Virus record (IMG/VR): IMGVR_UViG_3300018080_000098
Location: 124,001 to 188,000 of that record
Length of the DNA: 64,000 nt
Reading direction: 5' to 3' (one strand)
The position numbers and the translations under genes were made by a program. A model generated the notes under the pieces. That model ran no database searches and had not been told where the DNA came from. It worked only from the letters and a program-made list of their open reading frames with translations. How positions within the stretch are numbered: position 1 is the stretch's first letter; every line of letters begins with the position of its first letter. This document shows, in pieces, positions 6,191 to 63,809 of the stretch.

Positions 6191-6434
6191 CGATCACACC
6201 TCGATCACAACTTCCCCTCATATTTTACAAGACTTCACACCCCTCACAAAAGAGACGCACAAACAACCCCTTATACCCTCGAACACTCGCGCGCAACACG
6301 GGGGGCTCTTTTGGAACAAAAAGAAAAACCCAAAAAAAGACCACATCGTAAATGTGTCACAGATACACCAGCACAAATCTCCCCAACGTCTCAACGTTTC
6401 AAATTGTCTTTGTGTGTTTCAGGGACCCGTTCAA

Positions 6435-6472
6435 AGAAAAAAGCGAGCCCACCTTCCACAGTGGACCCGCTT
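6435..6472 (-). terminator. Intrinsic terminator
   Basis: Minus-strand stem AAGCGGGTCCAC/GTGGGCTCGCTT followed by a T run. Confidence 0.7.
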
Positions 6473-6564
6473 CAAGTCATCATGCAACCAATGGTACCCA
6501 CTAAGTGCTTTGACCGATCGATGGAATGAACGAACAGTGGATACCCAGCTACACGATCAACGTC
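6435..6564 (-). ncRNA. Putative ~130-nt rod-shaped small RNA
   Basis: Lies between a sigma70-type promoter and an intrinsic terminator. GGUAUCCACU/AGUGGGUACC and CGUGUAGCUG/UGGUUGCAUG pair fully only on the minus strand (G-U wobbles). Confidence 0.55.
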
Positions 6565-6569
6565 TCCCG

Positions 6570-6598
6570 TTTCTACTCACGTTCCGCGGCAAAGTCAA
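6570..6598 (-). promoter_or_regulatory. sigma70-type promoter
   Basis: TTGACT-17 nt-TAGAAA preceded by a T-tract (TTTTTTACTTGAC). Confidence 0.65.
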
Positions 6599-6769
6599 GT
6601 AAAAAATCGCCCCAAGTACAAAAAAGTTCCGCCTTCCTCTCCTACCGGTTCACCAGTAATTACCCCACCTTCCAACCAGAAAATAGACTAAAATGCCCAA
6701 AAGAATACACCACCCCATCCCTTGGCCGTAATTGCAAGGAAAATACCCCTCAGAACAACGCCGCACTAT

Positions 6770-7945
6770 TTATTCAGGAGGTCCTCGAGCCCACCAGCCC
6801 ACCGCAGACTCTCGGCTACAGCAGTCCTCGTACCGCACCACCGCACCGAAGTTGGCAGGATTCTGGAGGCGCTCCTTTCGCAGCGTCCACAGAACCAAGC
6901 AGGTCAGCGTGATCTCCAGCAGCTTCTGCTGCACACCACGCCATAGTAGCCGCCGCAGCAGCACCAGGTCATCCCACGCCTCGAACTCCGACACTGTCCA
7001 GTGGCCACGCCACAGAAGCTCCCCGTCCCCGTACGCTAGCAACCGACGCACGTACCGAGGGTGGAAGTCCTCCACCGCTTCAGCACCCTCCCCCAGCAAC
7101 CGAGGTACCGGACTGTAGAGCTCAGGCTGCTTGAACAGCGCAGACTCCTGCTGGTACAGAAGAGCCGTCTGCAACCGAGGCATCAGCCAGTCGAAAGCTG
7201 GTGGATGGTGCAACTGCCAGCGAGCTCTATCAGGATGGTCGTAGCGCCGCTCTACCTGAGAAGGATACCGGAGCAGGTACGACCAGCTCTCCCGCAGCAC
7301 ATCCTCCACCATCCGCGCCAGACGTTTCACCGCTTCGAGCGGGATACCAATCTCAGTACACTCGTTGACTATCATCCCCCGGTGGTCGTTTACCACCCTG
7401 CGGATGTAGAAGGTGTACTGCTTCCGTGGATGACATTGACGCAGCCGTCTTCGCCACGCCTCCGCGCGTATTGCTGCGTTCCTGGCTAACAGCTTGTTGG
7501 AAGGCTTGCGGTAGTTCGCGTTCTCGCAGTGCAGCTCCAGGATTTCAGAGCCTGTGCCCGCCACACCATCCATCGTATCCCGAAGCCGCAGCTCCGTACG
7601 CCCCAGCACCCGACGCTCCCCGTAGGACATCTTGCCCTTCGTGTTGGACCCCTCCAGCGCAGCTGCCATCGCAGTCAATCGGCTGAAGGTCGTCAGGAAG
7701 GCTTTCAGATGCTCCTTGTCCGCCAGGTTGTAGCAGAGCGCCCGTGTGGTCTGCTTGAATCGGTGAGGCTTCTTGATTCCACGCTTGGTGAGCCCACCAG
7801 TGACCCGTAGCCCCTTGGCCAGCTGTAGTAGCAGAGTGCTTTGGTGTTCTTGCACACCAACCCACGTCTGCTCGGGTCGACCGTGATACCAACGGTCCGA
7901 CTCTACAGCTCGAAGAAACCTGGCGCTTCTCACGTCCAAGGACAC
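6770..7945 (-). CDS. Hypothetical protein
   Basis: 391-aa ORF; CTTGTAAAAT element at 7981-7990 upstream. Confidence 0.75.
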   Translation of the reverse strand: MSLDVRSARFLRAVESDRWYHGRPEQTWVGVQEHQSTLLLQLAKGLRVTGGLTKRGIKKPHRFKQTTRALCYNLADKEHLKAFLTTFSRLTAMAAALEGSNTKGKMSYGERRVLGRTELRLRDTMDGVAGTGSEILELHCENANYRKPSNKLLARNAAIRAEAWRRRLRQCHPRKQYTFYIRRVVNDHRGMIVNECTEIGIPLEAVKRLARMVEDVLRESWSYLLRYPSQVERRYDHPDRARWQLHHPPAFDWLMPRLQTALLYQQESALFKQPELYSPVPRLLGEGAEAVEDFHPRYVRRLLAYGDGELLWRGHWTVSEFEAWDDLVLLRRLLWRGVQQKLLEITLTCLVLWTLRKERLQNPANFGAVVRYEDCCSRESAVGWWARGPPE

Positions 7946-8013
7946 AGCTCTACCTCAGTGGGACAGGCCCACCTCCCCCTATTTTACAAGGTGCACGTTG
8001 TCTTCGAGGGCGC

Positions 8014-8955: not shown

Positions 8956-8957
8956 TG

Positions 8958-11771: not shown

Positions 11772-11776
11772 TCCCT

Positions 11777-12979
11777 CTAACTCGCTAGACTCTCCTCTAG
11801 CATGTCCAGGTCGATCTGCGACATGAAGTACTCGATCCTCCCGTTGTCGCTCTCCGCTGCCCTTACGATTACTTTTCTTCCGTTCCATAGCTCTACCGTC
11901 AATGGCGTTACCTCAGGAGCCAGATTCAAAATGCTCTCGAAGTAATGCTGGTTGAGATACATAATCACCGGACCGCCCCCACGAGCCTTCGCCGTCGATG
12001 TAGGAATCTTCGACAACCCCGTCTTCCCATCCTTCTGCGCCGCCAACAGCACCTCGCTCTTCTCCACCTTCACATTCAACGTCAACGGCTCCGTTGCCGT
12101 CGAACTTACCTTCCCCACCGTCGACACCGCTTCCCGAATGTTCTTCCGAAGCGCCGTGAACATGCAGTCCATCTGCCCCTCCACCGTCTCCTTGTACACC
12201 GCGTCCGCATCCATGAATGGAGCCTCGATCGTCGGGTAGAACAAGTCCGCGTCCGCAGACTTGAACCGCACCATCCGAGTCTCCTCTATGTTACGCTCCA
12301 CCCCAATCTCCACCATAGACCCCTCGATGCTCCCCAGTATCGTGCTCAACGATACCGCCTTCAGTATGAACCGAGCGTTCGTACGTACCTTGATGTCTGT
12401 CGACCGCAGAAGACAGCGCCCGTAACTGTAGAAGTCGAGCCCCACCATCTCCAGCAACGCGCGCCCATCACCACCAGCCGGGCCAAGCTTGAACTGCATC
12501 CGCATCTCTTCTTGCTTCAGCCCCGGCTTGATCGCCACAAACCCAGCCGTCCGTGCCAACGCGTCCGACGGTATCCGCGCCACAATTGGCATCTCGTAGT
12601 CCGTAGGCTTCGTGTTCTCTATCACGTCCGCCGCTTCCTGGTCCGCGGGCAAGTCATACTTCGTCTTCTTCGTCGAAAAGTGCACCAATCGAACGTTGTA
12701 GTCGTACTCGATGGTCACCGTCCCCGACAACCGGTACTTCGCTACCTCCACCAGATCTACCCCGATGCTCCCCTCCCGCAACGTCTTCGCCTTCACAGCT
12801 TTCTGTACGTACGCTCCGTTGTTAGCTACATCGATCAGCAGTAGCCCCTCTACCACCTTCAAACGCCCCTTGAACCCACCGTCCCCCGTCTTCTTCGTGC
12901 TTTCAGTGCTCAGCTTCTGAAGCGTCTGTAACGCCTTCACCGTCTTCTTCAGGTCCTTCGCCGCTATTTGCACTTTCAT
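11777..12979 (-). CDS. dnaN: DNA polymerase III beta-like sliding clamp
   Basis: 400 aa, N-terminal MKVQIAAKDLKKTVKAL, repeated alpha/beta segments, C-terminal LNQHYFESIL...LTVELW...IEYFMSQI; a DnaX-like loader is also present. Confidence 0.6.
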   Translation of the reverse strand: MKVQIAAKDLKKTVKALQTLQKLSTESTKKTGDGGFKGRLKVVEGLLLIDVANNGAYVQKAVKAKTLREGSIGVDLVEVAKYRLSGTVTIEYDYNVRLVHFSTKKTKYDLPADQEAADVIENTKPTDYEMPIVARIPSDALARTAGFVAIKPGLKQEEMRMQFKLGPAGGDGRALLEMVGLDFYSYGRCLLRSTDIKVRTNARFILKAVSLSTILGSIEGSMVEIGVERNIEETRMVRFKSADADLFYPTIEAPFMDADAVYKETVEGQMDCMFTALRKNIREAVSTVGKVSSTATEPLTLNVKVEKSEVLLAAQKDGKTGLSKIPTSTAKARGGGPVIMYLNQHYFESILNLAPEVTPLTVELWNGRKVIVRAAESDNGRIEYFMSQIDLDMLEESLAS

Positions 12980-13866
12980 CAGGATGGCTCCTTTCGTGTG
13001 AGCCGGTCTATCGTTGGCACGTCTACCCGGTACAACTGCTGCTCAGCCAGGAACTTCATCAGCCCAGTCGGGTTCCCATCCTGGCGCTTCGAGAGCAAAC
13101 GTAACCCATCGCGCAGCTTCACCAATCGGTAGTTGAGCTCAATCTGCTCCCTGTATTTTACAACACGTTCCAGCTGTTTCCCCGTCAACACCCCCTTGGC
13201 CTTCGCTACCCTGTATGCCGCTCCAGGGGATGTCCCACACCCAGCGAGCTCCGTCAGAAGCACTGTCTTCATCCTCGGCACCCCTCGAGGAATGTTGTCC
13301 GAGTCCCCCAGAAACGCCTTCATGCACGCCACGTTCTCCGGAGGAACGCCCAGTGTTTCCTTGCACTTGTGTGCATCTATTAGACCTCCTTTACGCACTA
13401 CGGCGCACACCCGCTCCCCGCGGATTAGTTGCCAGAGATCTCTGTCTTCACTGATCATGAACGCCCGCTCACCCTTTTCCAACTTCTGAACGAAACAAGC
13501 TATCGCATCATCCGCTTCACCATGAGGAGCTTTTATTAGCTTTCCACGCATAAAATCTAGCAACTTCAGTGTTTTAGCCATAAACCCCTCGAACTCCAGA
13601 TCCCTTTTTCTGTCCCCCTTATACCCCGGAAACATACGAGCCCGGATCTCCCTGCCATCCCCCTCCAAAGCAACAACTAATTCAGCTCCAGGATACTCGC
13701 GCCGCAATTTTGCCAACATAAATATAAGCAATTCCAACGCCTTGGGCCGGTCCGTTGAATGATAAGCGCGCCTAACAAAGTTCGCCCAGTCCACAATTAC
13801 ATATTGTTTTTGCTGTGGAAATATAGGCGACATGCCTGATTTCATTGGGTTTTTAATACTTATCAT
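12979..13866 (-). CDS. 5'-3' exonuclease / flap endonuclease (PolA N-terminal / T4 RNase H family)
   Basis: IVDWANF, MFPGYKGDRK, EADDAIA, ISEDRDLWQL, FLGDSDNIP. Confidence 0.9.
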   Translation of the reverse strand: MISIKNPMKSGMSPIFPQQKQYVIVDWANFVRRAYHSTDRPKALELLIFMLAKLRREYPGAELVVALEGDGREIRARMFPGYKGDRKRDLEFEGFMAKTLKLLDFMRGKLIKAPHGEADDAIACFVQKLEKGERAFMISEDRDLWQLIRGERVCAVVRKGGLIDAHKCKETLGVPPENVACMKAFLGDSDNIPRGVPRMKTVLLTELAGCGTSPGAAYRVAKAKGVLTGKQLERVVKYREQIELNYRLVKLRDGLRLLSKRQDGNPTGLMKFLAEQQLYRVDVPTIDRLTRKEPS

Positions 13867-22754: not shown

Positions 22755-22931
22755 AGATTGTCCTTTTACAACTGATTCCAAGGTGTTGCGAACCATTCCC
22801 TCCTTGCGCACTCGACAATAATTGTGGCGCTCTCCGTTCTAGCACCAGCTGTGCGCAGGAGGAGGAAAGCCGACCACCACGGCCCGGCTTCCCCTTACAA
22901 CAGTTTTACAAGGTAGCGTTGGATTCTGACG

Positions 22932-24348: not shown

Positions 24349-24379
24349 CGTAATTTGCCTCGTAATATATTTTACAACA

Positions 24380-31015: not shown

Positions 31016-31079
31016 ATTGTAAAACTATAGTAGCGGCAGCTACTTTGTGCCCTTCATTTTACATCACTAGGAGCCTGTT

Positions 31080-33122: not shown

Positions 33123-33154
33123 AATATTTGTACCTTGCGGTTTCTGTTTGACTT

Positions 33155-33164
33155 CTTGTAAAAT
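33155..33164 (+). promoter_or_regulatory. TTGTAAAA element (representative copy; 13 copies listed in findings)
   Basis: CTTGTAAAAT upstream of the sigma-factor gene; the same core precedes many DNA-metabolism genes. Confidence 0.65.
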
Positions 33165-33232
33165 TTAATACAAGATTTGGGATCAGGGTCCTACTTCAGA
33201 GGATAACTAACCCTGCTGGATAGGTCAAGCGG

Positions 33233-34678
33233 ATGCATGCGGTAAATCATTCTCAAGCGGAAAACTGGAGTACTTTTAATGACTTAGCCAAGAGGACTCT
33301 TGAATATGATCCTTTGGTGAAAGAGGATCTAACTCGGACGTTCCTCCAAATCGAACAGTTGATATTCAAGGGTGTAGACTATCTCCTGATGGCTACTACG
33401 TTCGTGGAAGACAATTTGTGCTATCTTCTCGCAGAGATAGCGTCTGGAGTCATTAAGAGCCGGAAGGTCTACAAGGGGAAACGGGTCCGCCGACGAGTTG
33501 CCATGAACGACGAGATAGAAATGGGCGCTGAAAACAAGCGGATCTTCGGTATCGGCTTCGATCTCTTCAAACTCTCACGCATGGATCGCCAACACGCAGT
33601 TCCCTTCTCCAAACGTATCATTCGCACACTCCGCATTTCTACCAGCCACTACGAAAACATCCTTACCGCGTTCGCTAAGGTGGGCGCCCGCTACATTGAA
33701 GTATCCGACGATCTCGCCCACACTACCCTGCGCTTGATCAACCAACGCCAGAAAAACGAGAAGCGTGCTACGAAAAAGGGAGCAGCTTCCGAAACAGCGC
33801 TTACCAAGCAGGCCGAAGAGTTCATCGATCAAATGGACCTCCTCGAGCTCGATATGGGGTGCGTTGAGCCCAATCTTCTCTACGGCACCATCCGCGCAGT
33901 AGTTCGCATCCTGAAGCGCGTGCGCGTTCTGCAAGAGCGCATTCTGAAAGCGTACTCCCGTTTGGTGCTGAAGCCAGTGAAAGGCCGCGCACAAACAGAG
34001 ATGGAGGCCCTTGACCTGTTTCAATCAGGTAGCCTGGGCCTCTCACGCGCCATCTCCTTGTACGATCTCCGCTGCGGCACCAGCTTCCCTACCTTCGCAA
34101 ATTGGTGGATACGTCAGAAAATACTCGGGAGCGCGAAGCACAGCGGTTCCCTCATCAAGTTACCTGGTTCCGTAATCGAACGCTACCAGGAGATCACGAA
34201 AGCTGAACGTTTCTTTGAATCCAACCCCGACCTCCGCGATTCTTATACTATAGAAGATGTAGCCGCACGTTGCAAAACTACAGCCAAGTCCGTCGAGCTT
34301 GTACTCCGAAAAGTGCGCAGCACCCGTGTGGTCTCTCTAGAGTCGATGGTGAGCAGCAACGAGGAGGGGTACGAAAGTGACCTGGCAGCCGACCGAGCTC
34401 TGCTTGATGAGTCAATGGAAGAAGAGGAGGCGCTTCAGGCCACCTCCGAGTTCGTTTCTCAAGTACTCAGTCATGTAGAGGAAAGCCAACGCAACCTCGT
34501 GTGCCTGCGTTACGGAATCATTGAGCGCGTGGTATCTAAACTTGACCCTCGTCAAGAGGTACGTGAGCTCTTCCGCCAAGCTGCATGCAAAGCTTTGCTG
34601 CAGCAGAAGATGTCGATGCGTGCTAACAGCCATCTAGCGATGCTCCGGGTGGAGGAGCTTCCCGCCGACCAAAAATAG
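33233..34678 (+). CDS. Phage RNA polymerase sigma factor (RpoD/sigma70 family)
   Basis: Region 2 DLFQSGSLGLSRAISLYDLRCGTSFPTFANWWIRQKI, LIKLP, region 3 TIEDVAARC...VVSLE; region 4 degenerate. Confidence 0.88.
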   Translation: MHAVNHSQAENWSTFNDLAKRTLEYDPLVKEDLTRTFLQIEQLIFKGVDYLLMATTFVEDNLCYLLAEIASGVIKSRKVYKGKRVRRRVAMNDEIEMGAENKRIFGIGFDLFKLSRMDRQHAVPFSKRIIRTLRISTSHYENILTAFAKVGARYIEVSDDLAHTTLRLINQRQKNEKRATKKGAASETALTKQAEEFIDQMDLLELDMGCVEPNLLYGTIRAVVRILKRVRVLQERILKAYSRLVLKPVKGRAQTEMEALDLFQSGSLGLSRAISLYDLRCGTSFPTFANWWIRQKILGSAKHSGSLIKLPGSVIERYQEITKAERFFESNPDLRDSYTIEDVAARCKTTAKSVELVLRKVRSTRVVSLESMVSSNEEGYESDLAADRALLDESMEEEEALQATSEFVSQVLSHVEESQRNLVCLRYGIIERVVSKLDPRQEVRELFRQAACKALLQQKMSMRANSHLAMLRVEELPADQK

Positions 34679-34785
34679 CCCAGACGTGTAGAAACCACAC
34701 CTTCTCTTGTAAAATACGAGAAGGCAGAACACTGCTGAGCTGTGACACGGAATCACTACCGTTTACCGGATACTGAAAGGAGCCA

Positions 34786-39054: not shown

Positions 39055-40131
39055 ATGCCAAAGTTTCTGCACACCGCAGACCTGCACCTCAACGCCCTCA
39101 GGCGCTTCAGCCAGTTCTACCTGGAGCGCGCTCAGGAGTGCCTTCGGTCGATTCACCAAATCGCCAAAGAGCACCACGTAGAGTTCATTGTGGTCGCAGG
39201 AGATATCTACGACCGACGTGATATCACCCACGCGGAAAGGTTACTCCTGTCGGAGTGGCTGGCTGATTGTGACATTCCCATTATCATGATTAGCGGTAAC
39301 CACGACAAGCGCTCCGCAGAAATTGGAGATACCTGCATCAGCTACCTCTCCACTTTCTCCCACCGCTTGGGTGACCACCACGTCTACGATGGACCTCCCT
39401 CCGTCTACGAGCGCTTCGGCTGCTACTTCGCCCTCTTCCCTTTCCAGGGATGGATGGATCAGGAGCTCTTCCTCATCCTACAAACCCTCATCGCAGACCA
39501 CTGCCCGAACCAGTCCCTCCCGGTCATCGTGGTCATGCACGAGGCTGTGTACGGTTGTAAAACGGATGTCGGAATGACTATTACCAAGTCAAACCAAATC
39601 CGCCTCGACACCAGCTTTCCTCGAGTAACCTATTGGGCACTCGGGGATATGCACCTCCCACAACGTATCTCCGACTTCGCTCGTTACTCCGGGTCGCCAC
39701 ATCAAACCCGTTTCGATGAAGTCGAAGATAAGGGGGTGCTCATCGTTGATACCGACAACCCTGCATATCCGGAATTCGTTCCTGTTCCATCCATCCCCCT
39801 TCGTATCGTTACCGAGGAACCAGACCATTGGCCCTCTCCACAGGAAGCGCTTATCCAGTTTCGGCCCGATGGACCGTTCCCCGAACGTGCCCTGCCACTC
39901 AATGTGGAGTTTCACCCTAGCGTCGTCGCCCTCCACCACACCCAGGAACGAGACCGCAACGCCATCCGCGTAGGCATCTTCGAAGGACTCGACGCCGCAT
40001 TGCAGCGCGCCCGACTCCACGAAGACCTGTTCCCACTCGCGTGGCGCCTCGCCGTGAAATTAGCGAAAACAGCCGGAGTAGAAGTACCTCTACCCGATAG
40101 ATACCAGACCGAGGATACATCCGATGAGTGA
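39055..40131 (+). CDS. sbcD: SbcD/Mre11 nuclease
   Basis: LHTADLH, VAGDIYD, ISGNHD, MH, ALGDMH, YSGSP. Confidence 0.92.
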   Translation: MPKFLHTADLHLNALRRFSQFYLERAQECLRSIHQIAKEHHVEFIVVAGDIYDRRDITHAERLLLSEWLADCDIPIIMISGNHDKRSAEIGDTCISYLSTFSHRLGDHHVYDGPPSVYERFGCYFALFPFQGWMDQELFLILQTLIADHCPNQSLPVIVVMHEAVYGCKTDVGMTITKSNQIRLDTSFPRVTYWALGDMHLPQRISDFARYSGSPHQTRFDEVEDKGVLIVDTDNPAYPEFVPVPSIPLRIVTEEPDHWPSPQEALIQFRPDGPFPERALPLNVEFHPSVVALHHTQERDRNAIRVGIFEGLDAALQRARLHEDLFPLAWRLAVKLAKTAGVEVPLPDRYQTEDTSDE

Positions 40132-41283: not shown

Positions 41284-43725
41284 ATGCCCCTCATCGAATA
41301 CGAATCCCTCGATTTCGAGAACGCCTACATCTACCGGAAGTGTAGCTTCCCCCTGGAAAATCAGGGGCTCGTGCTCGTCCGCGGCCTCAACGTCGACGAT
41401 GGCGGCTACCTGGGTGCTGGCAAGTCTTCTATCTTTGAGGTGTTTGCTTCCCTTCAGGTGGGAAGAGGCGGTAAAAGAGAGCGCCGCCAAGGCAACTTCC
41501 GCACCAACCTGGTGAACTCGTTCGTCGGGGAAGATATGGTAGCTTCCCTCAAGCTCCGCGTCGACGGCCATCCGTACGAAATACGACAGTACCAGCAGCA
41601 CCACCGTTTTCACAACAAAATACTGGTCATCGATCGCGTGACCGGACAGGACATCCGACCCCGCTCCAGTGGCCACTCTCCCTTCAAATGGGTGCGTGAT
41701 GAGTTTCTGCGTATCGATGAGACTACGTTCTTCAATCTCATCTATCTGGTGCAGGAGCTTAATAATGTGATGATCCACGGGAAGGAGTACGAGCGCCGCA
41801 ATCGCTTGACAGCGATGTTCGATTTGGATATCTACGATGAGCTCCGCGCACTAGCTAAACGGGCCCTCTCAATGCATACTACTTCCATGTCGGACTTCGA
41901 GGAAGTCCGCAGCGAGCTTAGAGAGGTAAAACAGAAAATCTTCGCCCTACCGGACTTGGTAGACCTCGAAGCGGAGTTCGAAACAGCGGAAGCCCTCCTG
42001 AACCATATGCAGGAGCAGCACGAAGAGGATACTCAGGAATACACGCAGGTAGCCGATCTCTGCTCAAAACTTCGGCAACGCTCCACAGGACGTCGGCAAA
42101 TCATGTCGAAGTTCAAAGGCAGCTCCCTGACAAACACGTTCGACCACCCCAAGGATATTACCATTCGCAACGTGAAAAGATGGAAGAGTCGCTATGATAA
42201 CTTCAGCGCTGACTACATGGCTGCCCAGACAGACCTCGAGAAGCTCGAGAAACGCGATGCCCTTCGTGCCCAACTATTGAAGCTGAGCGACCGTGATGCA
42301 GAAGAGATTCAGGACGACTTGACCGACACCAAGACGAAGCTCACCTATATGAATCAGGTCGAGCTCCCTCAATCGGAAGAACGTCAGAGCCTGCTCATCA
42401 AATTGCAGCGGTTGACGGAGCCCGTTACACCGCTGGAAGAGCTTGAGGATGAGTTGGAAGCTGAGCAAAAGGAAGAGACAGAACTCAAGCGTGACGTGAA
42501 GGACCTGGATGCCGAAGTGCGTGAAGCTGTATGCCCACACTGCAAGCGCCCCTTTGATATGACAGCTGAGGAGCTAGCGGAGAAGCGAGGACGCTTAGCT
42601 ACTGCGCGGGACAGACTGCAGGAGCTTACACGAACAATCCATAAGCTGAAGAAGGAAATCAAGGCCTCCCGCGACATCAAAAACATCCGTGGGCGACTCA
42701 AGGCGTTCGAGACGCAGCGCTCCCCCGAGGAAGTGACAGAAGATATTCGGGAGCTTTCAGGTAAAGAGCGCAGGCTCGCCTCCGAACTCGAGACGTCGCG
42801 CCAGCGTACCAGGATAGAAGCAGAACTGGAGACGATGCCCACCGCGAGCAAAGATGAGCTCATCGAAAAGTGCAGCAAGCTTCGTCGCAGTGTCGAACGC
42901 GCCAGGGAACGCCACGAGGTGGGGAAGTTCATTGTGGAGAAGTTGGAGGAGTTGAAAAACCTCCCCAAGGGAAGCTTGGACGAAGCACAAGGACTACTAC
43001 GAGAACTTCAAGGACGCATGACGAGGATGTCGTCGAAAATTTCACAGGCGAGCGCAGATGCAACACACCTGAAAGAGCGTGTCAACGAGCTGCGTCAGCT
43101 ACTTCGGCGGGAGACCACCCTGAAGCGCACGTTGGAAAAGCAGAAAGCAATCGTCTCCGAGATTACGTGCTTGGAAGCCCTGAACAAAGCGTTCGGCACC
43201 AACGGTATGAAACAAGACCGCTTCGCCACCATCCTATCCGATGCGGCTGAGCGTACAGTCCCTGCATACTCAGATATCCTGTGGCCAAACCGTAACGTTT
43301 CCCTAGACTTGTCCGGTGAAGATGGCTCCTCGCTCCAGTTTGCGCTGGGGCGCCAGTCGGGAAATGTGGCCACCAGAAGCAGTATGCTCTCTGGCGGCGA
43401 ACGCCATAAAGCAGGGCTCGCTTTCCTTTTCGGGCTGCGCGACCTCAAGGAGCTCTACACGGGCAGCCGGTCCAACGTTCTTATCGTGGACGAGCCCTTC
43501 GGAAACCTCGATCCTCTCGGAACCGAAGGACTCATTTCCATCTTCGCTCTGCTCAAACAGAAGTTCGGTTCCGTCTTCGTCATCAGTCACAGACCAGAAG
43601 TTCTGTCCCATCCAGTGTGGGACCAGACGTGGTGGGCCATTCGCGAAAACAACAACGCGACACTTTATTTGGAAGACCCACCAGCGCGGTACCATCAAAT
43701 TGCCAACAACCTTGTAAAACAATAA
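41284..43725 (+). CDS. sbcC: SbcC/Rad50 ATPase
   Basis: GAGKSS, Q-loop YLVQ, coiled coil with CPHC Zn hook, LSGGE, IVDEP, VISH. Confidence 0.92.
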   Translation: MPLIEYESLDFENAYIYRKCSFPLENQGLVLVRGLNVDDGGYLGAGKSSIFEVFASLQVGRGGKRERRQGNFRTNLVNSFVGEDMVASLKLRVDGHPYEIRQYQQHHRFHNKILVIDRVTGQDIRPRSSGHSPFKWVRDEFLRIDETTFFNLIYLVQELNNVMIHGKEYERRNRLTAMFDLDIYDELRALAKRALSMHTTSMSDFEEVRSELREVKQKIFALPDLVDLEAEFETAEALLNHMQEQHEEDTQEYTQVADLCSKLRQRSTGRRQIMSKFKGSSLTNTFDHPKDITIRNVKRWKSRYDNFSADYMAAQTDLEKLEKRDALRAQLLKLSDRDAEEIQDDLTDTKTKLTYMNQVELPQSEERQSLLIKLQRLTEPVTPLEELEDELEAEQKEETELKRDVKDLDAEVREAVCPHCKRPFDMTAEELAEKRGRLATARDRLQELTRTIHKLKKEIKASRDIKNIRGRLKAFETQRSPEEVTEDIRELSGKERRLASELETSRQRTRIEAELETMPTASKDELIEKCSKLRRSVERARERHEVGKFIVEKLEELKNLPKGSLDEAQGLLRELQGRMTRMSSKISQASADATHLKERVNELRQLLRRETTLKRTLEKQKAIVSEITCLEALNKAFGTNGMKQDRFATILSDAAERTVPAYSDILWPNRNVSLDLSGEDGSSLQFALGRQSGNVATRSSMLSGGERHKAGLAFLFGLRDLKELYTGSRSNVLIVDEPFGNLDPLGTEGLISIFALLKQKFGSVFVISHRPEVLSHPVWDQTWWAIRENNNATLYLEDPPARYHQIANNLVKQ

Positions 43726-47945: not shown

Positions 47946-48569
47946 ATGCCGAGGAAGAAAGCCCAGCAAGTAACATTGGTAGGAGTTCGCGGAGCCAAGC
48001 TGCCTGTCTCCGAGTGTCTGTTGGTAAGCGAGGACGCTGACAGCTACGTGGTACAGGCGGTCCGGAAGACACGCGGGCGTGCAGCGAACAAGCTCGCCAC
48101 GTACGTGCTGCCGAAGTCGATGGTGCAGTACTATTATTCGGAGGAGGACATCGAGGGTGACGTTGACGGTGTCCCCGTGGCGGCTGCGAAGGCTGCTCCT
48201 CGCGCGGCAGCCAAGAAACCCGCAGCGAAAAAGAAGGTGGCGAAGAAACCCGCAGCGAAAAAGAAGGTGGCGAAGAAGGCCGCTGCTCCGAAGAAGCGTG
48301 GTCGTCCGAAGGGCAGCAAGAACAAGCCCAAGGAAGGTGCTGCTGCTCCGAAGAAGCGTGGTCGGCCTAAGGGCTCGAAGAACAAGTCCAAGGAAGGTGC
48401 TGCTGCTCCGAAGAAGCGTGGTCGTCCGAAGGGCAGCAAGAACAAGCCCAAGGAAGGTGCTGCTGCTCCGAAGAAGCGTGGTCGGCCTAAGGGCTCGAAG
48501 AACAAGTCCAAGGATGCCGGTTCGGCCAAAGCGAATAAAGCTGCATCACTTTTCGATGAGAGCTTCTAG
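47946..48569 (+). CDS. Histone H1-like / HMGA-like DNA-binding protein with four AT-hooks
   Basis: AAKKPAAKKKVAKK repeats followed by 4 x PKKRGRPKGSKNK. Confidence 0.85.
   Translation: MPRKKAQQVTLVGVRGAKLPVSECLLVSEDADSYVVQAVRKTRGRAANKLATYVLPKSMVQYYYSEEDIEGDVDGVPVAAAKAAPRAAAKKPAAKKKVAKKPAAKKKVAKKAAAPKKRGRPKGSKNKPKEGAAAPKKRGRPKGSKNKSKEGAAAPKKRGRPKGSKNKPKEGAAAPKKRGRPKGSKNKSKDAGSAKANKAASLFDESF
48213..48513 (+). repeat. In-frame tandem repeats: 2 x 30 bp, then 4 x ~60 bp (ABAB, a 120-bp duplication)
   Basis: AAGAAACCCGCAGCGAAAAAGAAGGTGGCG at 48213 and 48243; the 60-nt lines starting 48301 and 48421 are identical. Confidence 0.95.
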
Positions 48570-54638: not shown

Positions 54639-54641
54639 CTC

Positions 54642-57083: not shown

Positions 57084-57191
57084 AGTTCTACTTCTTTGAA
57101 CATACACGGGAAGGTTCTTTATACTATAACTAGAAAGAACTGAGCTCCCGCTGCGGAAAGCTGTCTTGTAAAACAGAGTAGAGAGGTAACA

Positions 57192-57449
57192 ATGTCACGC
57201 GTGTACAGCAACAATTGGCTCCAGTTGGAAGGTGGCGAACTGGAAGGTTACTATAACGAAGCTATGCAATGGGTGGTCTACAAGAGCTCTAACGACGGTT
57301 TCTGGTACGGCTTTCACAAGAAGTCAGAGCCTGTGTGGCAGATAGGTCCGTACGATACACGAGAGGACGCCATGAATTGGTGCCTCCGTGTTCAGCTGCA
57401 CGCGGATTTCGTGCATGGCAGGGAGCCAAGCACTGTGGCTGCTGGGTGA
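57192..57449 (+). CDS. Hypothetical protein
   Basis: GAGG SD; CTTGTAAAAC element at 57165. Confidence 0.7.
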   Translation: MSRVYSNNWLQLEGGELEGYYNEAMQWVVYKSSNDGFWYGFHKKSEPVWQIGPYDTREDAMNWCLRVQLHADFVHGREPSTVAAG

Positions 57450-59380: not shown

Positions 59381-59453
59381 GCTGGCGTAGCTCAACTGGT
59401 AGAGCAGCTGATTTGTAATCAGCCGGTTGGGGTTTCGAGCACCTCCGCCAGCT
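59381..59453 (+). tRNA. tRNA-Thr (UGU), CCA not encoded
   Basis: Acceptor GCTGGCG/CGCCAGC, D stem GCTC/GAGC, anticodon stem GCTGA/TCAGC with TGT at 59414-16, T loop TTCGAGC. Confidence 0.92.
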
Positions 59454-59825: not shown

Positions 59826-59859
59826 CCACATCTTGTAAAATTACCAGAGACGAATTACC

Positions 59860-60516
59860 ATGCTCACGCAAATCGTTTGCATAAGCGACACCCACGGTCG
59901 GCAGGGCGCCCTCCGTGTGCCGGACGGCGACATCCTGATCGTAGCCGGAGACCTTACCGCCTACGGCAAGCGGTCAGAGTACCGCCGATTCAACACTTGG
60001 CTCGAGGAGCTGCCACACAAACACAAAATCGTCATCGCGGGCAACCACGACAAAGCACTCTACTACATGCCCAAAGAGAGCTCACAGGAACGTCTGTCCA
60101 ACGCGACTTACCTTATGGACGATGAGGTAACCGTCGAGGGTATCAGAATTTACGGCTCCCCCTGGACACCGACTTTCTATCACTGGTATTTCATGCTGGA
60201 CCGCGGTCCCGAAATCCGTGCCAAGTGGGACCTGATTCCCGAAGGTATCGATATCCTCGTAACCCACGGACCGCCAGCTGGCTACTGTGACTGGTCCTAC
60301 TACAGTGAAACGTACATGGGCTGCGAGGAGCTCCGCGCTGCCGTAGAACGTGTGCAGCCCAAGTTGCACGTGTTCGGGCACAACCACAGTGACTACGGGC
60401 AAGCCCGTAACGCAAATACGTTGTTTGTGAACGCCTCAGTGTGCACGGAGAGCTACGAACCGATGAACGATCCGGTGGTGATTCACTGGCCCTTTGAAGT
60501 GTGGAAGGATTTGTAA
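59860..60516 (+). CDS. Calcineurin-like metallophosphoesterase
   Basis: ISDTHG, VAGDLT, IAGNHD, LVTHGPP, HVFGHNH. Confidence 0.92.
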   Translation: MLTQIVCISDTHGRQGALRVPDGDILIVAGDLTAYGKRSEYRRFNTWLEELPHKHKIVIAGNHDKALYYMPKESSQERLSNATYLMDDEVTVEGIRIYGSPWTPTFYHWYFMLDRGPEIRAKWDLIPEGIDILVTHGPPAGYCDWSYYSETYMGCEELRAAVERVQPKLHVFGHNHSDYGQARNANTLFVNASVCTESYEPMNDPVVIHWPFEVWKDL

Positions 60517-61029: not shown

Positions 61030-61042
61030 TCGAGCAACGTAA

Positions 61043-61115
61043 CGGGGATGTGGTGTAATCTGGTAACACACGTGCTTTGGGAGCACGAATTGCCGTTCAA
61101 ATCGGACGTCCCCGA
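61043..61115 (+). tRNA. tRNA-Pro (UGG) with atypical 8-bp acceptor and shortened T stem
   Basis: CGGGGATG/CGTCCCCG, D stem GTGT/ACAC, anticodon stem CGTGC/GCACG with TGG at 61078-80, T loop TTCAAAT, C1-G72 and A73. Confidence 0.85.
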
Positions 61116-61135
61116 TAAACAAGGAGGGTCAGAAA

Positions 61136-62314: not shown

Positions 62315-62317
62315 ATC

Positions 62318-62515
62318 ATGAAAGAAGACAGCTTCCCTGAACGTTTAGTAGAAGCTGCCAGATTGACAGAGCCCATGTTGCGTGAGTACAGCCAATCCTT
62401 GGCTGACCGACACGACGCCAGCTTGGAAGGGCTTAAACGGTTGCTTACCAACATACACGATATTGAGCCTGAGTTTGCTCAGGTTGTAGAGGACAATTTC
62501 TGGGACTTGGTGTAG
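62318..62515 (+). CDS. Hypothetical protein
   Basis: 65-aa ORF in the packed operon. Confidence 0.55.
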   Translation: MKEDSFPERLVEAARLTEPMLREYSQSLADRHDASLEGLKRLLTNIHDIEPEFAQVVEDNFWDLV

Positions 62516-62516
62516 T

Positions 62517-62702
62517 ATGCCTACGAAGAACCTCCGCGCACATTACTACTCCGAGTGCCGCATGGGGTGTGGCTTCCTTGTAGGAAACGCAACTCCATTG
62601 AAGGTGTGTGCGGTGTGTCGGCAAGAGCTCGAGCTTCCTCCCTGTGAGGCTACTACAGCACCAGAAGTACTAGAAGACGAGTGGAAAGAAATATTACCAT
62701 GA
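62517..62702 (+). CDS. Small Cys-rich protein carrying the PCEATxAPEVLxD motif
   Basis: CRMGC...CAVC; the motif is shared with 58024..58251. Confidence 0.6.
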   Translation: MPTKNLRAHYYSECRMGCGFLVGNATPLKVCAVCRQELELPPCEATTAPEVLEDEWKEILP

Positions 62703-63238
62703 CTACTATTACCGAAGTATTAGGCAAAGCTGCGTCCTCCCAGAGCAGCGTCATCGGCAAGAACGCGAAGCCTGTAGGTATCACACCCGCTATCGCGCTC
62801 ACCAACCCGAAGTTTGCCCACAACGTCGGCGCCGCTCAGCGAGCAGCCTCCTGCTTCGGCGTCCAGCAACTCTGGTTCACCGGCAACAGGGTTTCGCTCG
62901 AGCCCGAGAAGGGCCAGCGTCTTCCCCGCGAAGAACGCATGAAGGGATACAAGGACGTCGAGCTCATCCAATTCGACTACTTCTTCGACCAGTTCACGGA
63001 CGTGACGCCTGTTGCTGTAGAGCTCCGGCCCAACAGTGAGAACCTCGTCCACTTCGAGCACCCCGAAAACGCGCTTTATATTTTTGGCCCCGAAGACGGT
63101 TCCATCCCGCAGGTAGCTCTGCGGCACTGCCACCGCTTCGTCACCATACCAACCAGACACTGTGTGAACCTGGCAGCAGCGGTCTACATCATCCTGTACG
63201 ACCGACTGCTCAAACAGACAAGAGAGGGTAGCTTATGA
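62699..63238 (+). CDS. SpoU/TrmH-family (SPOUT) RNA methyltransferase
   Basis: LTNPKFAHNVGAAQRAASCFG, IFGPEDGSIP, VTIP...VNLAAAVYIILYDR. Confidence 0.88.
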   Translation: MTTITEVLGKAASSQSSVIGKNAKPVGITPAIALTNPKFAHNVGAAQRAASCFGVQQLWFTGNRVSLEPEKGQRLPREERMKGYKDVELIQFDYFFDQFTDVTPVAVELRPNSENLVHFEHPENALYIFGPEDGSIPQVALRHCHRFVTIPTRHCVNLAAAVYIILYDRLLKQTREGSL

Positions 63239-63525
63239 GCGAAGAGAAGAAGGGTGACCTGGTAAAAATCGGCGCGTTGTGGACCAACACAGACAGAAAT
63301 GGTAACAGATGTCTCACTGGGAGAATGGGAGACGCTGTCCTTCTGGTTTTCAAGAACCAGTTCAAGCAAGAAGACAAGCAACCAGACTACATTGCATACG
63401 TTGCGCGTCCTACTGAGAAGAAAGAAGACGGTCCGCAAGATTCCAAAGCCAAGTCGCTTTTCGATGGAAATAGCGGCAACCCCAACGTCGTGAACGCGGA
63501 TGACGGTGCAGATATTCCGTTTTGA
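63235..63525 (+). CDS. DUF736-like small protein ending in an SSB-type DIPF tail
   Basis: KIGALW...G...LTG...VFKN...KQPDY; C-terminus DDGADIPF. Confidence 0.7.
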   Translation: MSEEKKGDLVKIGALWTNTDRNGNRCLTGRMGDAVLLVFKNQFKQEDKQPDYIAYVARPTEKKEDGPQDSKAKSLFDGNSGNPNVVNADDGADIPF

Positions 63526-63528
63526 TCC

Positions 63529-63798
63529 ATGATTTGTAAAGACTGCAAAACTATCATCGGTTTCGAAGAGGAAACCGATACCACAGATTGCCACGTTTGC
63601 CGCGGTGTGCTCTGTCCCGTGTGTACCAAAGAGGGCGATATATGGTACTGCTATAAATGCGACCTGGTGATTTGTGACCAGTGTGTAACCGTAGTCAGCA
63701 GCGACGCCCACGACGACGACATTGATGACGCATCGGAATCCTACACAGTTTGCCCTCTATGTGGCAGAGAGGTTATGCTGTTTAACGACTATTTGTAA
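63529..63798 (+). CDS. Cys-rich Zn-finger protein
   Basis: Six CxxC pairs in 89 aa. Confidence 0.7.
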   Translation: MICKDCKTIIGFEEETDTTDCHVCRGVLCPVCTKEGDIWYCYKCDLVICDQCVTVVSSDAHDDDIDDASESYTVCPLCGREVMLFNDYL

Positions 63799-63809
63799 AA
63801 GATACGCCA

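What the first reader, a model, noticed from the sequence alone, without database searches (positions are those of the whole stretch)
6222..63801. TTGTAAAA element ahead of a dozen genes: a -35-less phage promoter or operator
Seen by eye, 13 copies: minus strand 6222, 7981, 13155, 22763, 22903, 24369; plus strand 31016, 33155, 34706, 43711, 57165, 59832, 63792. All are co-oriented with a start codon about 10-180 nt downstream (nrdJ, ruvC, Cas4-like, sigma, SSB, clamp, phosphoesterase and others); only 13155 is deep inside a CDS. A variant GATGTAAAAT near 31056-31065 faces dnaG. No shared -35 is visible. Established: T4 gp55 uses -10-only promoters. Inference: the middle-gene promoter of the phage sigma, or the binding site of the AT-hook protein.
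Basis: partly seen in the sequence, partly recalled or inferred. Interest (0 to 1): 0.65.

Follow-up and report, generated by a model that had tools for sequence, protein, structure and literature searches.

The report
Phage promoter motif without a -35 box
A 13-base signal (core TTGTAAAA) sits just upstream of dozens of replication, recombination and packaging genes in an uncultured 350-kb phage and is kept in its relatives, so it is most likely this phage group's own promoter, a new sequence of a familiar type, though no transcript data exist to prove it.

Summary
TTGTAAAA occurs 14 times in the window (1.3 expected) and 43 times in the complete 349,793-bp phage genome (9 for the reversed control). 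It is the most over-represented sense-strand 8-mer. 42 of 43 copies point the way the local genes do, and about 27 of 43 lie in the 15% that is non-coding. Intergenic copies share A-T-C-TTGTAAAA-T-A and no -35 element. One-mismatch variants are not enriched.

It behaves like a -10-region promoter. Start codons, often with a ribosome-binding site in between, lie 8-25 nt downstream in 21 of 53 cases. One copy sits at -10 spacing behind a consensus TTGACA. Copies occupy divergent spacers. The motif is kept at orthologous sites in relatives with about 50% protein identity (Fisher p = 4e-5), and drifts to CTGTAAAS or TTGTTAAA in sister lineages.

It precedes replication, recombination and packaging genes, so it is not middle-only. 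A separate sigma-70-like class (TTGACA-N17-TATTTT) precedes tRNAs and genes near the genome ends.

That the phage's single RpoD-like sigma reads it is inference (about 0.5). The AT-hook operator idea is not supported. No RNA data exist. Verdict: a new member of a known kind, of moderate interest.

The parts
6223..6230 (-). Motif copy, intergenic, 32 nt before the ATG of a 178-aa gene of unknown function (5654-6190).
   Evidence: The G004 orthologue carries the exact motif upstream.
7982..7989 (-). Motif copy, intergenic, 36 nt before the GTG of a 391-aa gene of unknown function (6770-7945).
   Evidence: Exact motif upstream of the G004 orthologue.
13156..13163 (-). Motif copy inside the 3' fifth of an exonuclease gene (12979-13866), 176 nt before a 400-aa gene (11777-12979). 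Probably an internal promoter.
   Evidence: Exactly conserved in G003 and in G004, where the distance is also 176 nt. Coding constraint may contribute to the conservation.
22764..22771 (-). Motif copy overlapping the ribosome-binding site of nrdJ, 9 nt before the real ATG at 22754. Doubtful as a promoter.
   Evidence: not conserved in G003. A 2-nt indel upstream shows that nrdJ starts at 22754, giving 911 aa as in L026.
22904..22911 (-). Motif copy, intergenic, 149 nt before the nrdJ ATG and followed by a conserved hairpin. Likely the main nrdJ promoter.
   Evidence: Exact in G003 within indel-rich DNA. At most one mismatch in G004. CTGTAAAC plus a hairpin at the same place in L026.
24370..24377 (-). 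Motif copy, intergenic, 21 nt before the GTG of a RuvC-like resolvase gene (23821-24348).
   Evidence: Exact in G003. Not found upstream of the G004 orthologue.
31017..31024 (+). Motif copy in the 64-bp divergent spacer, 55 nt before the TTG start of the PD-(D/E)XK nuclease gene (31080-32009).
   Evidence: The orthologous site reads TTGTAAAG in G003, TTGTAAAC in L025/G004 and CTGTAAAC in L026.
31057..31064 (-). One-mismatch variant ATGTAAAA(T) in the same spacer, facing the DnaG-like primase gene (30083-31015). It lies face to face with the 31017 copy.
   Evidence: Kept as CTGTAAAA in G003 and L025 and as CTGTAAAG in L026, while the spacing between the two copies varies from 12 to 33 nt.
33156..33163 (+). 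Motif copy in the divergent spacer, 69 nt before the ATG of the sigma gene.
   Evidence: The position turns over in relatives: TTGTAAAT 25 nt further upstream in G003, CTGTAAAG in L026, TTGTTAAA in L027, and an exact copy 284 nt upstream in L025.
33233..34678 (+). The phage's only detectable sigma factor: 481 aa, RpoD-like regions 2 to 4 plus a clade-specific N-terminal domain of about 220 aa. Proposed, but not shown, to read the motif.
   Evidence: Pfam Sigma70_r2. Aligns with solved SigA/RpoD chains through region 4.2. About 47 orthologues at 34-100% identity.
34707..34714 (+). Motif copy, intergenic, 71 nt before the GTG of a conserved 430-aa gene of unknown function (34786-36078).
   Evidence: The best-conserved site. 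Exact in G003, L025/G004 and G006; CTGTAAAC in L026; TTGTTAAA in L027.
39555..39562 (+). Motif copy in the middle of the Mre11-like phosphoesterase gene (39055-40131), with no gene start nearby. Probably a chance copy.
   Evidence: G003 reads CTGTAAAA at this place, within conserved coding sequence.
43712..43719 (+). Motif copy overlapping the last codons of the SMC/Rad50-like gene (41284-43725), 17 nt before the GTG of a 170-aa gene.
   Evidence: Exact in G003 and in L025.
57166..57173 (+). Motif copy in a divergent intergenic region, 18 nt before the ATG of an 85-aa ORF (57192-57449), with a ribosome-binding site in between.
59833..59840 (+). Motif copy, intergenic, about 380 nt after tRNA-Thr and 19 nt before the ATG of a metallophosphoesterase gene (59860-60516).
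63793..63800 (+). Motif copy 9 nt before the ATG of a 113-aa ORF (starts at 63810), with no ribosome-binding site. A candidate leaderless transcript.
   Evidence: Not conserved upstream of the G004 orthologue.

Best explanation
TTGTAAAA is the invariant core of a 13-nt promoter element (A-T-C-TTGTAAAA-T-A) that lies in the -10 region and works without a -35 box.

RNA polymerase would melt the A-rich part. Either TAAAAT is the -10 hexamer with TTG directly against it, or TG-T-AAAATA is an extended -10 with an unusual hexamer. Transcription would start about 6-10 nt past the last A of the 8-mer.

The element heads the phage-specific transcription units: replication, recombination, nucleotide metabolism, the sigma gene itself, portal, a terminase-like gene and the structural blocks. 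A separate class of textbook sigma-70-type promoters (TTGACA, 17 nt, TG-n-TATTTT) serves tRNAs and the genes near the genome ends, presumably through the unmodified host enzyme.

The most likely reader is host core RNA polymerase carrying the phage's own 481-aa RpoD-like sigma. Weak recognition of TAAAAT by the host sigma could give the first sigma transcripts, and the phage sigma would then amplify its own synthesis.

Shown: the motif's statistics, orientation, geometry and conservation. Inferred: that it is a promoter (my estimate about 0.85), where transcription starts, and which protein reads it (phage sigma about 0.5).
For: Statistics:
- 14 copies in the window against 1.29 expected, and 43 in the genome against 9 for the reversed control.
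- It is the top sense-strand 8-mer: 39 observed against 3.6 expected under an order-4 Markov model.
- 42 of 43 copies are co-oriented with the genes, and about 27 of 43 lie in the 15% that is non-coding. Binomial p = 5e-12 and 1.7e-12.

Specificity:
- One-mismatch variants are not enriched. Only 3 of 45 such sites in the window are intergenic.
- Flanks are conserved only from -3 to +9, so this is not a longer repeat, and there is no -35 element.

Geometry:
- In 21 of 53 sense copies with a downstream start in G000 and G004, the start codon lies 8-25 nt downstream, commonly with a ribosome-binding site in between. Any transcription start must therefore lie within about 8 nt of the motif, which fits a -10 element and rules out a -35 element.
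- Seven copies have a start codon 8-11 nt downstream with no ribosome-binding site by my scan. These are candidates for leaderless transcripts.
- At genome 224749 a consensus TTGACA lies 15 nt upstream of a copy, which puts TAAAAG at an 18-nt spacer.

Need for a promoter:
- Copies sit in divergent spacers, where nothing can read in from upstream.

Conservation:
- In G003 (about 70% nucleotide identity), 5 of 9 copies are exact, four of them islands in indel-rich intergenic DNA.
- In G004 (median protein identity 50%), 7 of 18 orthologues keep the exact motif and 12 of 18 keep it with at most one mismatch, against 4 of 124 and 19 of 124 for genes without it (p = 3.9e-5).
- Sister lineages carry CTGTAAAS (L026) or TTGTTAAA (L027) at the same gene junctions.

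Reader:
- Only one sigma gene is detectable and no RNA polymerase subunits are found.
- Sigma region 2.4 and 3.0 residues differ between lineages with different motif variants.
Against: - There are no transcript data at all: no RNA run holds this sequence.
- The sigma gene itself sits behind the motif, so something else must fire it first.
- The sigma keeps the region 4.2 residues that read a -35 box (E, R and Q are invariant across the clade), yet these promoters have no -35.
- G006 keeps TTGTAAAA at two sites although its sigma region 2.4 differs (QWIRQRIRIF against WWIRQKILGS). G005 and G007 have the sigma but no enrichment of the motif.
- The TG is one base closer to a TAAAAT hexamer than in canonical extended -10 promoters.
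- Motif copies are not regularly preceded by terminator-like hairpins, although my finder was crude.
- A few copies (39555, 68566, 263272, 289887 and the antisense 268190) sit deep in coding sequence.
- Gene calls come from my own crude ORF caller.
- The variant motifs in L026 and L027 were picked after looking at only 21 kb of each contig.
Confidence: 0.55

Rival explanations
1. It is a promoter, but it is read by the host's primary sigma rather than the phage sigma. A phage protein would disable -35 recognition, as gp39 of Thermus phage P23-45 or AsiA of T4 does. That would shut off the TTGACA-type promoters and leave only -35-independent, extended -10-like promoters such as TTG-TAAAAT active.
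For: TAAAAT matches TATAAT at 5 of 6 positions, with T at the -7 position in 30 of 36 intergenic copies. A TG lies just upstream. The genome has two sharply different classes, one dependent on -35 and one not, which is the situation described for P23-45 (PMC3950348). This reading also removes the bootstrapping problem, because the sigma gene itself lies behind the motif.
Against: Eight invariant positions with no tolerated mismatch is far stricter than the putative host-type class in the same genome, whose -10 hexamers vary. The TG is displaced by one base from the canonical position. No gp39-like or AsiA-like protein was identified, although none was specifically searched for.
Confidence: 0.2
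2. It is a promoter for a phage-encoded RNA polymerase that is too divergent to be recognised, either single-subunit or split multi-subunit as in other jumbo phages.
For: A short, invariant, asymmetric element is typical of phage polymerase promoters. Several proteins of 900-1982 aa have no family match at all.
Against: No match to RNA polymerase beta (PF00562), beta-prime (PF00623) or T7-like (PF00940) families in six-frame searches of the complete genome. The T7-like search had no positive control. The phage invests in a sigma factor, which implies use of the host core enzyme. Published surveys find that jumbo phages carry either their own polymerase or sigma factors (PMC7824862).
Confidence: 0.08
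3. It acts in the RNA (UUGUAAAAUA) as a processing site or as the binding site of an RNA-binding protein, for example the KH-domain protein encoded two genes upstream of sigma. It would cut or regulate polycistronic transcripts between genes.
For: A sense-strand, between-genes distribution is equally expected for an RNA signal. A conserved KH-domain gene lies in the sigma cluster. Copies at the very ends of upstream genes (43712, 63793) would suit processing.
Against: Copies lie in divergent spacers, where a promoter is required and no other conserved block is present. One copy sits at -10 spacing behind a consensus TTGACA. The distance to start codons is variable, not fixed.
Confidence: 0.07
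4. It is an operator: the DNA site of a phage regulator, either the four-fold AT-hook protein (47946-48569) or a helix-turn-helix protein, which represses or activates nearby promoters.
For: The AT-hook protein exists, with four tandem KKRGRPKGSKNK repeats. The motif contains an A4 tract. In the primase/nuclease spacer two copies form an inverted pair.
Against: The element is not palindromic and is strictly oriented with the downstream gene (42 of 43). The spacing of the one inverted pair varies from 12 to 33 nt between relatives. AT-hooks read the minor groove of A/T runs with low specificity, yet TTGTTAAA, TTGTATAA, TTATAAAA and TTTTAAAA are not enriched, and the G and flanking T's are invariant. 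No other promoter-like element accompanies the copies, so the genes would be left without promoters.
Confidence: 0.05

Closest known systems
T4-type late promoters (TATAAATA, read by gp55 with gp33 and the gp45 clamp)
   Same: A short, nearly invariant, A/T-rich 8-mer in the -10 region (T4: -13 to -6; PMC1524935), no -35 element, dozens of copies per genome, and strict orientation. In T4-like phages a diverged gp55 goes with a diverged consensus (Aeh1; PMC1524935), which resembles the drift seen here between sister lineages.
   Different: The sequence differs. The only sigma found here is a full-length RpoD-like protein with regions 2 to 4, not a minimal gp55. No gp33 was identified, and dependence on the sliding clamp is untested. 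The motif also precedes replication genes, not only late genes.
Extended -10 promoters (TGnTATAAT), including the middle and late promoters of Thermus phage P23-45
   Same: A TG next to an A/T-rich hexamer, independence from a -35 element, and use by a phage to set its later genes apart from -10/-35 promoters (PMC3950348).
   Different: Here the TG either abuts the TAAAAT hexamer (one base too close) or is canonically spaced from an atypical AAAATA hexamer. Conservation is much stricter than for host-sigma promoters.
Phage-encoded sigma-70-family factors with their own promoter consensus (SPO1 gp28 and gp33/34, and the RpoD-like sigmas of jumbo phages)
   Same: A phage sigma redirects host core polymerase to a phage-specific consensus. 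Jumbo phages that lack their own polymerase encode minimal or RpoD-like sigmas (PMC7824862; SPO1 in the abstract of PMC13401047).
   Different: The SPO1 sigmas use two-part (-35 and -10) promoters (from my own knowledge, not checked here). This sigma clade has a unique N-terminal domain of about 220 aa, and its apparent promoters have a single block.

Membership tests
Promoters without a -35 element, defined by the -10 region alone (T4-late type) | A short conserved A/T-rich element with no conserved -35 element upstream | tested here: met
   Information profiles of 43 copies and of 36 intergenic copies: 13 conserved positions, and nothing above about 0.5 bit from -45 to -5 relative to the motif start.
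Promoters without a -35 element, defined by the -10 region alone (T4-late type) | The element lies about 6-13 nt upstream of a mapped transcription start | not testable with these tools
   No RNA run holds the sequence. Indirect support: ribosome-binding sites and start codons 8-25 nt downstream in 21 of 53 copies, and one copy at -10 spacing behind TTGACA.
Promoters without a -35 element, defined by the -10 region alone (T4-late type) | Read by a minimal gp55-type sigma together with gp33 and the sliding clamp | not tested
   No gp55 or gp33 profile was searched. The only sigma-family matches are the RpoD-like sigma, a sub-threshold region-2 match at genome 297414 that contains a stop codon, and a weak region-4-like match that proved to be an XRE-type helix-turn-helix protein.
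Extended -10 promoters (TGnTATAAT) | TG exactly one base upstream of a -10 hexamer that has A at -11 and T at -7 | tested here: inconclusive
   Two registers fit only in part. TTG-TAAAAT has a good hexamer (T at -7 in 30 of 36) but the TG is one base too close. TG-T-AAAATA has canonical TG spacing but A at -12 and at -7.
Sigma-70 family (for the gene at 33233-34678) | Region 2 (core binding and -10 reading), plus regions 3 and 4 | tested here: met
   Pfam Sigma70_r2 at 35.7 bits, above the cut-off. phmmer alignment with solved SigA/RpoD chains covers residues of about 146-459, through region 4.2. Pfam's region 3 and region 4 models do not reach their thresholds.
Operator of a dimeric repressor | Two-fold symmetric site, or an inverted pair at fixed spacing, working in either orientation | tested here: not met
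   The core is asymmetric, and 42 of 43 copies are co-oriented with genes. The single inverted pair has 12-33 nt spacing across relatives.
AT-hook binding site | A/T-rich minor-groove site that tolerates A/T exchanges | tested here: not met
   A/T-swapped one-mismatch variants occur 1-11 times each, no more often than their reversed controls (1-42), against 43 for the core. The G and T positions are invariant.
Chi-like or replication-oriented polar sequences | Oriented with replication, and located mostly inside genes | tested here: not met
   About 63% of copies lie in the 15% that is non-coding. Copies follow single inverted genes inside blocks of the opposite strand, for example genome 217607 and the variant at 31057.

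The most novel reading that the evidence does not exclude
The sigma clade found here (about 47 members, each with a unique N-terminal domain of about 220 aa) reads a single-block 13-nt promoter in which the TG-like dinucleotide abuts the -10 hexamer. Sigma and promoter have co-evolved across the clade: TTGTAAAA, CTGTAAAS, TTGTTAAA, and possibly GTTAATCT-N2-AGTA in the most distant lineage. Nature would thus have produced a graded series of mutually orthogonal sigma/promoter pairs that keep an intact but unused -35-reading region 4.
Probability: 0.3. Interest if true: 0.6.

Novelty: new member of a known kind. Interest (0 to 1): 0.45.

Why it matters
If confirmed, the motif gives a ready map of about 40 transcription units in an uncultured 350-kb phage whose genes are mostly unannotatable. 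It also separates a host-type promoter class from a phage-specific one. It would link a previously undescribed clade of RpoD-like phage sigma factors to a stringent promoter with no -35 element. The lineage-specific variants at the same gene junctions form a natural experiment on how a sigma and its promoter change together. Short, strict, orthogonal sigma/promoter pairs are also useful parts for synthetic biology. As a phenomenon, a phage-specific -10-only promoter is already well known from T4 and P23-45, so the advance is in detail, not in kind.

Tried and rejected
- **Close cultured relatives.** Megablast of 20 kb against GenBank phages found nothing. A terminase-based search of IMG/VR returned only a 100%-identical fragment.
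- **Terminator adjacency.** My hairpin-plus-T-run finder showed no regular terminator upstream of motif copies and found more antisense than sense hits, so it is uninformative. One call to the built-in scanner was rejected for exceeding the size limit and I did not repeat it.
- **Reading the motif as a -35 element (TTGTAA resembling TTGACA).** Rejected: nothing like a -10 element lies 16-19 nt downstream, and in many copies the start codon is too close.
- **A longer mobile repeat or promoter cassette.** Rejected: there is no conservation beyond -3 to +9.
- **A second sigma.** The weak region-4-like match at genome 254450 is an XRE-type helix-turn-helix protein. The weak region-2 match at genome 297414 contains a stop codon and lies antisense to a gene.
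- **Annotation.** Pfam and PHROGs left most downstream genes and all the largest proteins blank. The major capsid gene was not found.
- **Literature searches by motif string** returned only chance matches.
- **GACTTGCC in G006.** This apparent motif is only a 12-nt tandem repeat at the contig end.

Full report
**Where the window lies.** The window is bases 124001-188000 of a 349,793-bp IMG/VR virus record with direct terminal repeats. CheckV rates it complete, and its G+C content is 53.7%. It is a jumbo phage from a sediment metagenome with no close cultured relative.

**Checking the observation.**
- An exact search finds 14 copies of TTGTAAAA in the window. Dinucleotide-preserving shuffles give a mean of 1.29 and a maximum of 6.
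- Genome-wide there are 43 copies, against 9 for the reversed, non-complemented control.
- I built a crude gene model: a codon-usage-scored, non-overlapping ORF caller that gave about 403 genes and left 15.2% of the genome non-coding.
- Against that model, TTGTAAAA is the single most over-represented 8-mer on the sense strand. It occurs 39 times against 3.6 expected under an order-4 Markov model, and only 4 times antisense.
- Three of those four 'antisense' copies lie in divergent spacers and in fact face the correct gene, so 42 of 43 copies are co-oriented with a downstream gene (binomial p = 5e-12).
- About 27 of 43 copies lie in non-coding DNA (p = 1.7e-12). The copies inside genes are mostly near the 3' end of the upstream gene.

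**Anatomy of the element.**
- Aligning all 43 copies, and then the 36 intergenic sense copies of this genome plus relative G004, gives A-T-C-TTGTAAAA-T-A. C precedes the core in 30 of 36 copies, T follows it in 30 of 36, and A comes next in 31 of 36.
- There is a weak A-rich patch about 14 nt upstream, a purine-rich stretch 5-12 nt downstream, and no -35-like signal.
- Nothing is conserved beyond -3 to +9, so this is not a longer dispersed repeat.
- Recognition looks very strict. None of the 24 one-mismatch 8-mers is enriched. Of 45 one-mismatch sites in the window, only 3 are intergenic, and only one has independent support: ATGTAAAAT at 31057, minus strand, facing the primase gene.

**Why it looks like a -10-region promoter.**
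1. *Distance to the gene.* In 21 of the 53 sense copies of G000 and G004 that have a downstream start, the start codon lies 8-25 nt beyond the 8-mer, commonly with a GGAG-type ribosome-binding site in between. If the element is a promoter, transcription must begin within about 8 nt of it. That fits a -10 element and rules out a -35 element. Seven copies have a start codon 8-11 nt downstream with no ribosome-binding site by my scan, for example window 63793 and genome 189011 and 192375. These are candidates for leaderless transcripts.
2. *A composite promoter.* At genome 224749 a consensus TTGACA lies 15 nt upstream of a copy, which puts TAAAAG at an 18-nt spacer, where a -10 hexamer belongs.
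3. *Divergent spacers.* Copies occupy spacers where no upstream gene can supply read-through: 31016-31079, 33123-33232 and 57108-57191. In the 64-bp primase/nuclease spacer, the two face-to-face TGTAAAA elements are the only blocks kept across four lineages, while the distance between them varies from 12 to 33 nt.
4. *Conservation.* This is set out in the next section.

**Conservation in relatives.**
- *G003* is a 35.7-kb fragment collinear with window 12186-48133 at about 70% nucleotide identity. Five of the nine window copies in that span are exactly conserved. Four are islands in intergenic DNA full of indels (22904, 24370, 34707, 43712) and the fifth (13156) lies inside a coding sequence. 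Two more are one-mismatch versions (31017 and the in-gene copy 39555). The copy before sigma is replaced by TTGTAAAT 25 nt further upstream, and 22764 is lost.
- *G004* is a 260-kb record whose sigma is 64% identical and whose median reciprocal-best-hit protein identity is 50%. It has 23 copies against 2 for the control. Of 18 orthologous genes with the motif within -300 to +60 in G000, 7 have the exact motif and 12 have it with at most one mismatch in G004. For genes lacking it the figures are 4 of 124 and 19 of 124 (Fisher p = 3.9e-5).
- *L026* (sigma 50% identical) carries CTGTAAA(G/C) at five orthologous junctions: primase, nuclease, sigma, the gene after sigma, and nrdJ. From the counts, I expect about 0.14 such sites in 550 nt.
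- *L027* (sigma 42% identical) carries TTGTTAAA upstream of primase, sigma and the gene after sigma, about 0.05 expected. The L026 and L027 variants were chosen after seeing the sites, in only 21 kb of each contig, so they need genome-wide testing.
- *G006* (sigma 34% identical) keeps TTGTAAAA after sigma, and a TGTAAAA faces the divergent gene.
- *G005 and G007* show no enrichment. In G007 the only strongly intergenic, sense-oriented motif is GTTAATCT-N2-AGTA.

**What the motif controls.**
- In the window it precedes:
  - nrdJ (22904; the real ATG is at 22754);
  - a RuvC-like resolvase (24370);
  - a PD-(D/E)XK nuclease (31017);
  - the DnaG-like primase (the variant at 31057);
  - sigma (33156);
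  - a conserved 430-aa gene of unknown function (34707);
  - a metallophosphoesterase (59833);
  - several small or unannotated genes.
- Elsewhere in the genome it precedes a DNA polymerase A fused to a UDG domain, a DUF7873 protein, the portal gene and a terminase-like gene. It is also the only motif class at the heads of the long minus-strand blocks that hold tail-sheath and tail-fibre genes. It is therefore a general phage-specific class, not a middle class alone.

**Other promoter-like classes in the genome.**
- About 25 copies of a textbook sigma-70-type promoter are present: an A/T-rich upstream stretch, TTGACA, a 17-nt spacer, and TG-n-TATTTT. They lie mostly near the genome ends, and four of them lie upstream of phage tRNA genes, between about 40 and 480 nt away (genome 190801, 250695, 254207 and 334363).
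- A third class, TCTCTATACAAAAT, has 12 copies, and a palindrome, GGTTAAACC, has about 35. Both crowd the terminal regions.
- The simplest reading is that unmodified host holoenzyme serves the TTGACA class and that a phage-directed enzyme serves the TTGTAAAA class.

**Who reads the motif.**
- Six-frame family searches of the complete genome find one sigma gene (window 33233-34678) and no RNA polymerase beta, beta-prime or T7-like polymerase. The T7-like search had no positive control.
- Proteins of 900-1982 aa remain without any family match.
- A weak region-4-like match at genome 254450 is an XRE-type helix-turn-helix protein.
- The sigma aligns with solved SigA/RpoD chains from about residue 146 to 459, through region 4.2.
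- It belongs to a distinct clade of about 47 proteins of 440-481 aa at 34-100% identity. They share an N-terminal domain of about 220 aa of unknown function and a conserved neighbourhood: primase, nuclease, KH protein, a 205-aa gene, sigma, RecA, Mre11-like, clamp loader and Rad50-like.
- Compared with E. coli sigma-70 (numbering from my own knowledge), the residues that read the -35 box are kept: RELFRQ against RERIRQ, with E, R and Q invariant in the clade.
- Region 2.4 (WWIRQKILGS against WWIRQAITRA) and region 3.0 (the His that reads the extended -10 TG is Ser) are altered.
- Region 2.4 also differs between lineages with different motif variants: QWIKQRIFKL with CTGTAAAS, and YWINQKILGF with TTGTTAAA.
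- That fits co-evolution of sigma and promoter, but it rests on only three lineages, and G006 is an exception.
- Against the sigma as sole reader, its own gene lies behind the motif in most lineages. That requires either basal recognition by the host sigma or another factor.
- I therefore rate 'promoter' at about 0.85 and 'read by the phage sigma' at about 0.5.

**Rival explanations.**
- The main rival is the mechanism of Thermus phage P23-45. There a small phage protein displaces region 4 of the host sigma, so that only extended -10 phage promoters stay active (PMC3950348).
- An unrecognised phage polymerase, an RNA-level signal (a KH-domain protein is encoded nearby) and an operator are less likely, for the reasons given under the rival explanations.
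- The AT-hook protein is real (window 47946-48569, four KKRGRPKGSKNK repeats). However, an asymmetric, oriented site with eight invariant positions and no tolerance for A/T swaps is not what AT-hooks bind.
- A Chi-like or replication-oriented signal is excluded by the intergenic location, and by copies that follow single inverted genes.

**Comparison with known systems.**
- The closest functional analogue is the T4 late promoter TATAAATA, at -13 to -6, read by gp55 with gp33 and the gp45 clamp. In T4-like phage Aeh1 a diverged gp55 goes with a diverged consensus (PMC1524935).
- The closest structural analogue is the extended -10 promoter. Here, however, the TG is either one base too close to a good hexamer (TAAAAT) or correctly spaced from a poor one (AAAATA).
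- Jumbo phages without their own polymerase are known to encode minimal or RpoD-like sigmas (PMC7824862).
- I found no paper describing this motif or this sigma clade, within a library limited to open-access papers and preprints.

**Verdict.** The promoter interpretation is supported indirectly and strongly. Its temporal label, its reader and its exact start site remain inferences, because no RNA data exist for this uncultured phage. It is a new consensus of a known kind of element, of moderate interest. The lineage-specific drift of the consensus alongside a new sigma clade is the part most worth following up.

**Limits.** Gene calls come from my own crude caller. Most genes are unannotatable. 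The variant motifs in sister lineages were identified after the fact from short loci. Read laying, structure prediction and the large protein-representative search were not used, because nothing in the claim depended on them.

Noticed in passing
window 33190-33215, and the orthologous spacers in L019-L021, L025, L026 and L027: A second conserved box, (G)AGTAACTA, lies in the sigma 5' leader and divergent spacer. It reads GGATAACTA in this genome and GAGTAACTA in the four other lineages, including the one whose sigma is only 42% identical. It may be the promoter of the divergent 205-aa gene or a regulatory site for sigma.
   Followed up: partly
window 22860-22900 (minus strand), and L026:980-1035: A G+C-rich hairpin directly follows the nrdJ promoter-like copy at 22904. 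It recurs at the same place in G003 and L026 although the sequence differs. No Rfam family matches it. It may be a leader attenuator or a stabiliser.
   Followed up: partly
genome 2-53 kb, 217-262 kb and 305-348 kb (L001-L003, L011-L014, L016-L018); in the window at 54640: About 25 textbook sigma-70-type promoters: a T-rich upstream stretch, TTGACA, 17 nt, and TG-n-TATTTT. Many are followed by a conserved leader, GTCGGACGGAAA. Four lie upstream of phage tRNA genes.
   Followed up: partly
genome 5-33 kb and 329-349 kb (L001, L002, L017, L018): The regions near the terminal repeats are packed with three further repeats: the palindrome GGTTAAACC (about 35 copies), TCTCTATACAAAAT (12 copies, followed about 35 nt later by AAAATATT and GGTCTGGAT), and AAAATATT (42 copies genome-wide). 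GGTTAAACC-like palindromes also recur in G004.
   Followed up: partly
window 33233-33890 (sigma residues 1-220): The sigma clade shares a well-conserved N-terminal domain of about 220 aa, with many invariant residues. It has no Pfam match and no counterpart in cellular sigma factors.
   Followed up: no
window 47946-48569 (+): A 207-aa protein with four tandem AT-hook repeats (KKRGRPKGSKNK) and no family match. It may be a nucleoid-like DNA-binding protein of the phage.
   Followed up: partly
window 31016-31079: The primase and nuclease genes are driven by face-to-face promoter-like elements, so their 5' leaders would be complementary over about 12-33 nt. The arrangement is kept in four lineages.
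   Followed up: partly
genome 254300-254719 (L013:14300-14719, +): A 139-aa XRE-type helix-turn-helix protein is encoded just after a sigma-70-type promoter and tRNA-Leu. It is a candidate early regulator.
   Followed up: partly
genome 183-260 kb and 333.7 kb; in the window at 59381-59453 and 61044-61114: ARAGORN finds 18 tRNA genes in the genome, two of them with odd anticodon loops. Two lie in the window. One TTGTAAAA copy (genome 189011) starts 3 nt after the 3' end of tRNA-Ala.
   Followed up: partly
genome 224780-226900 (L012:4780-6900): About 2 kb downstream of the composite TTGACA/TTGTAAAA promoter holds no ORF of 45 aa or more starting within the first 420 nt, and no gene called by my model before tRNA-Gln. 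It may be a non-coding transcript.
   Followed up: no
L027:5046-6800 and L027:1292-1654: In the most A/T-rich relative, the sigma neighbourhood has acquired a gene with a Cas12f1-like TNB domain (TnpB-like) and an HNH endonuclease gene.
   Followed up: no
G007 (L055-L064), for example G007:100441 (-) and 100477 (+): In the most distant sigma-bearing relative, the only strongly intergenic, sense-oriented motif is GTTAATCT-N2-AGTA: 8 of 8 copies are intergenic and sense, and one pair lies back to back. It may be that lineage's counterpart of TTGTAAAA.
   Followed up: partly
G006:54-400 (L052): A 12-nt tandem repeat (GACTTGCC plus 4 variable bases, about 28 units) lies at the contig start. In k-mer statistics it looks like an enriched motif but is not one.
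   Followed up: yes
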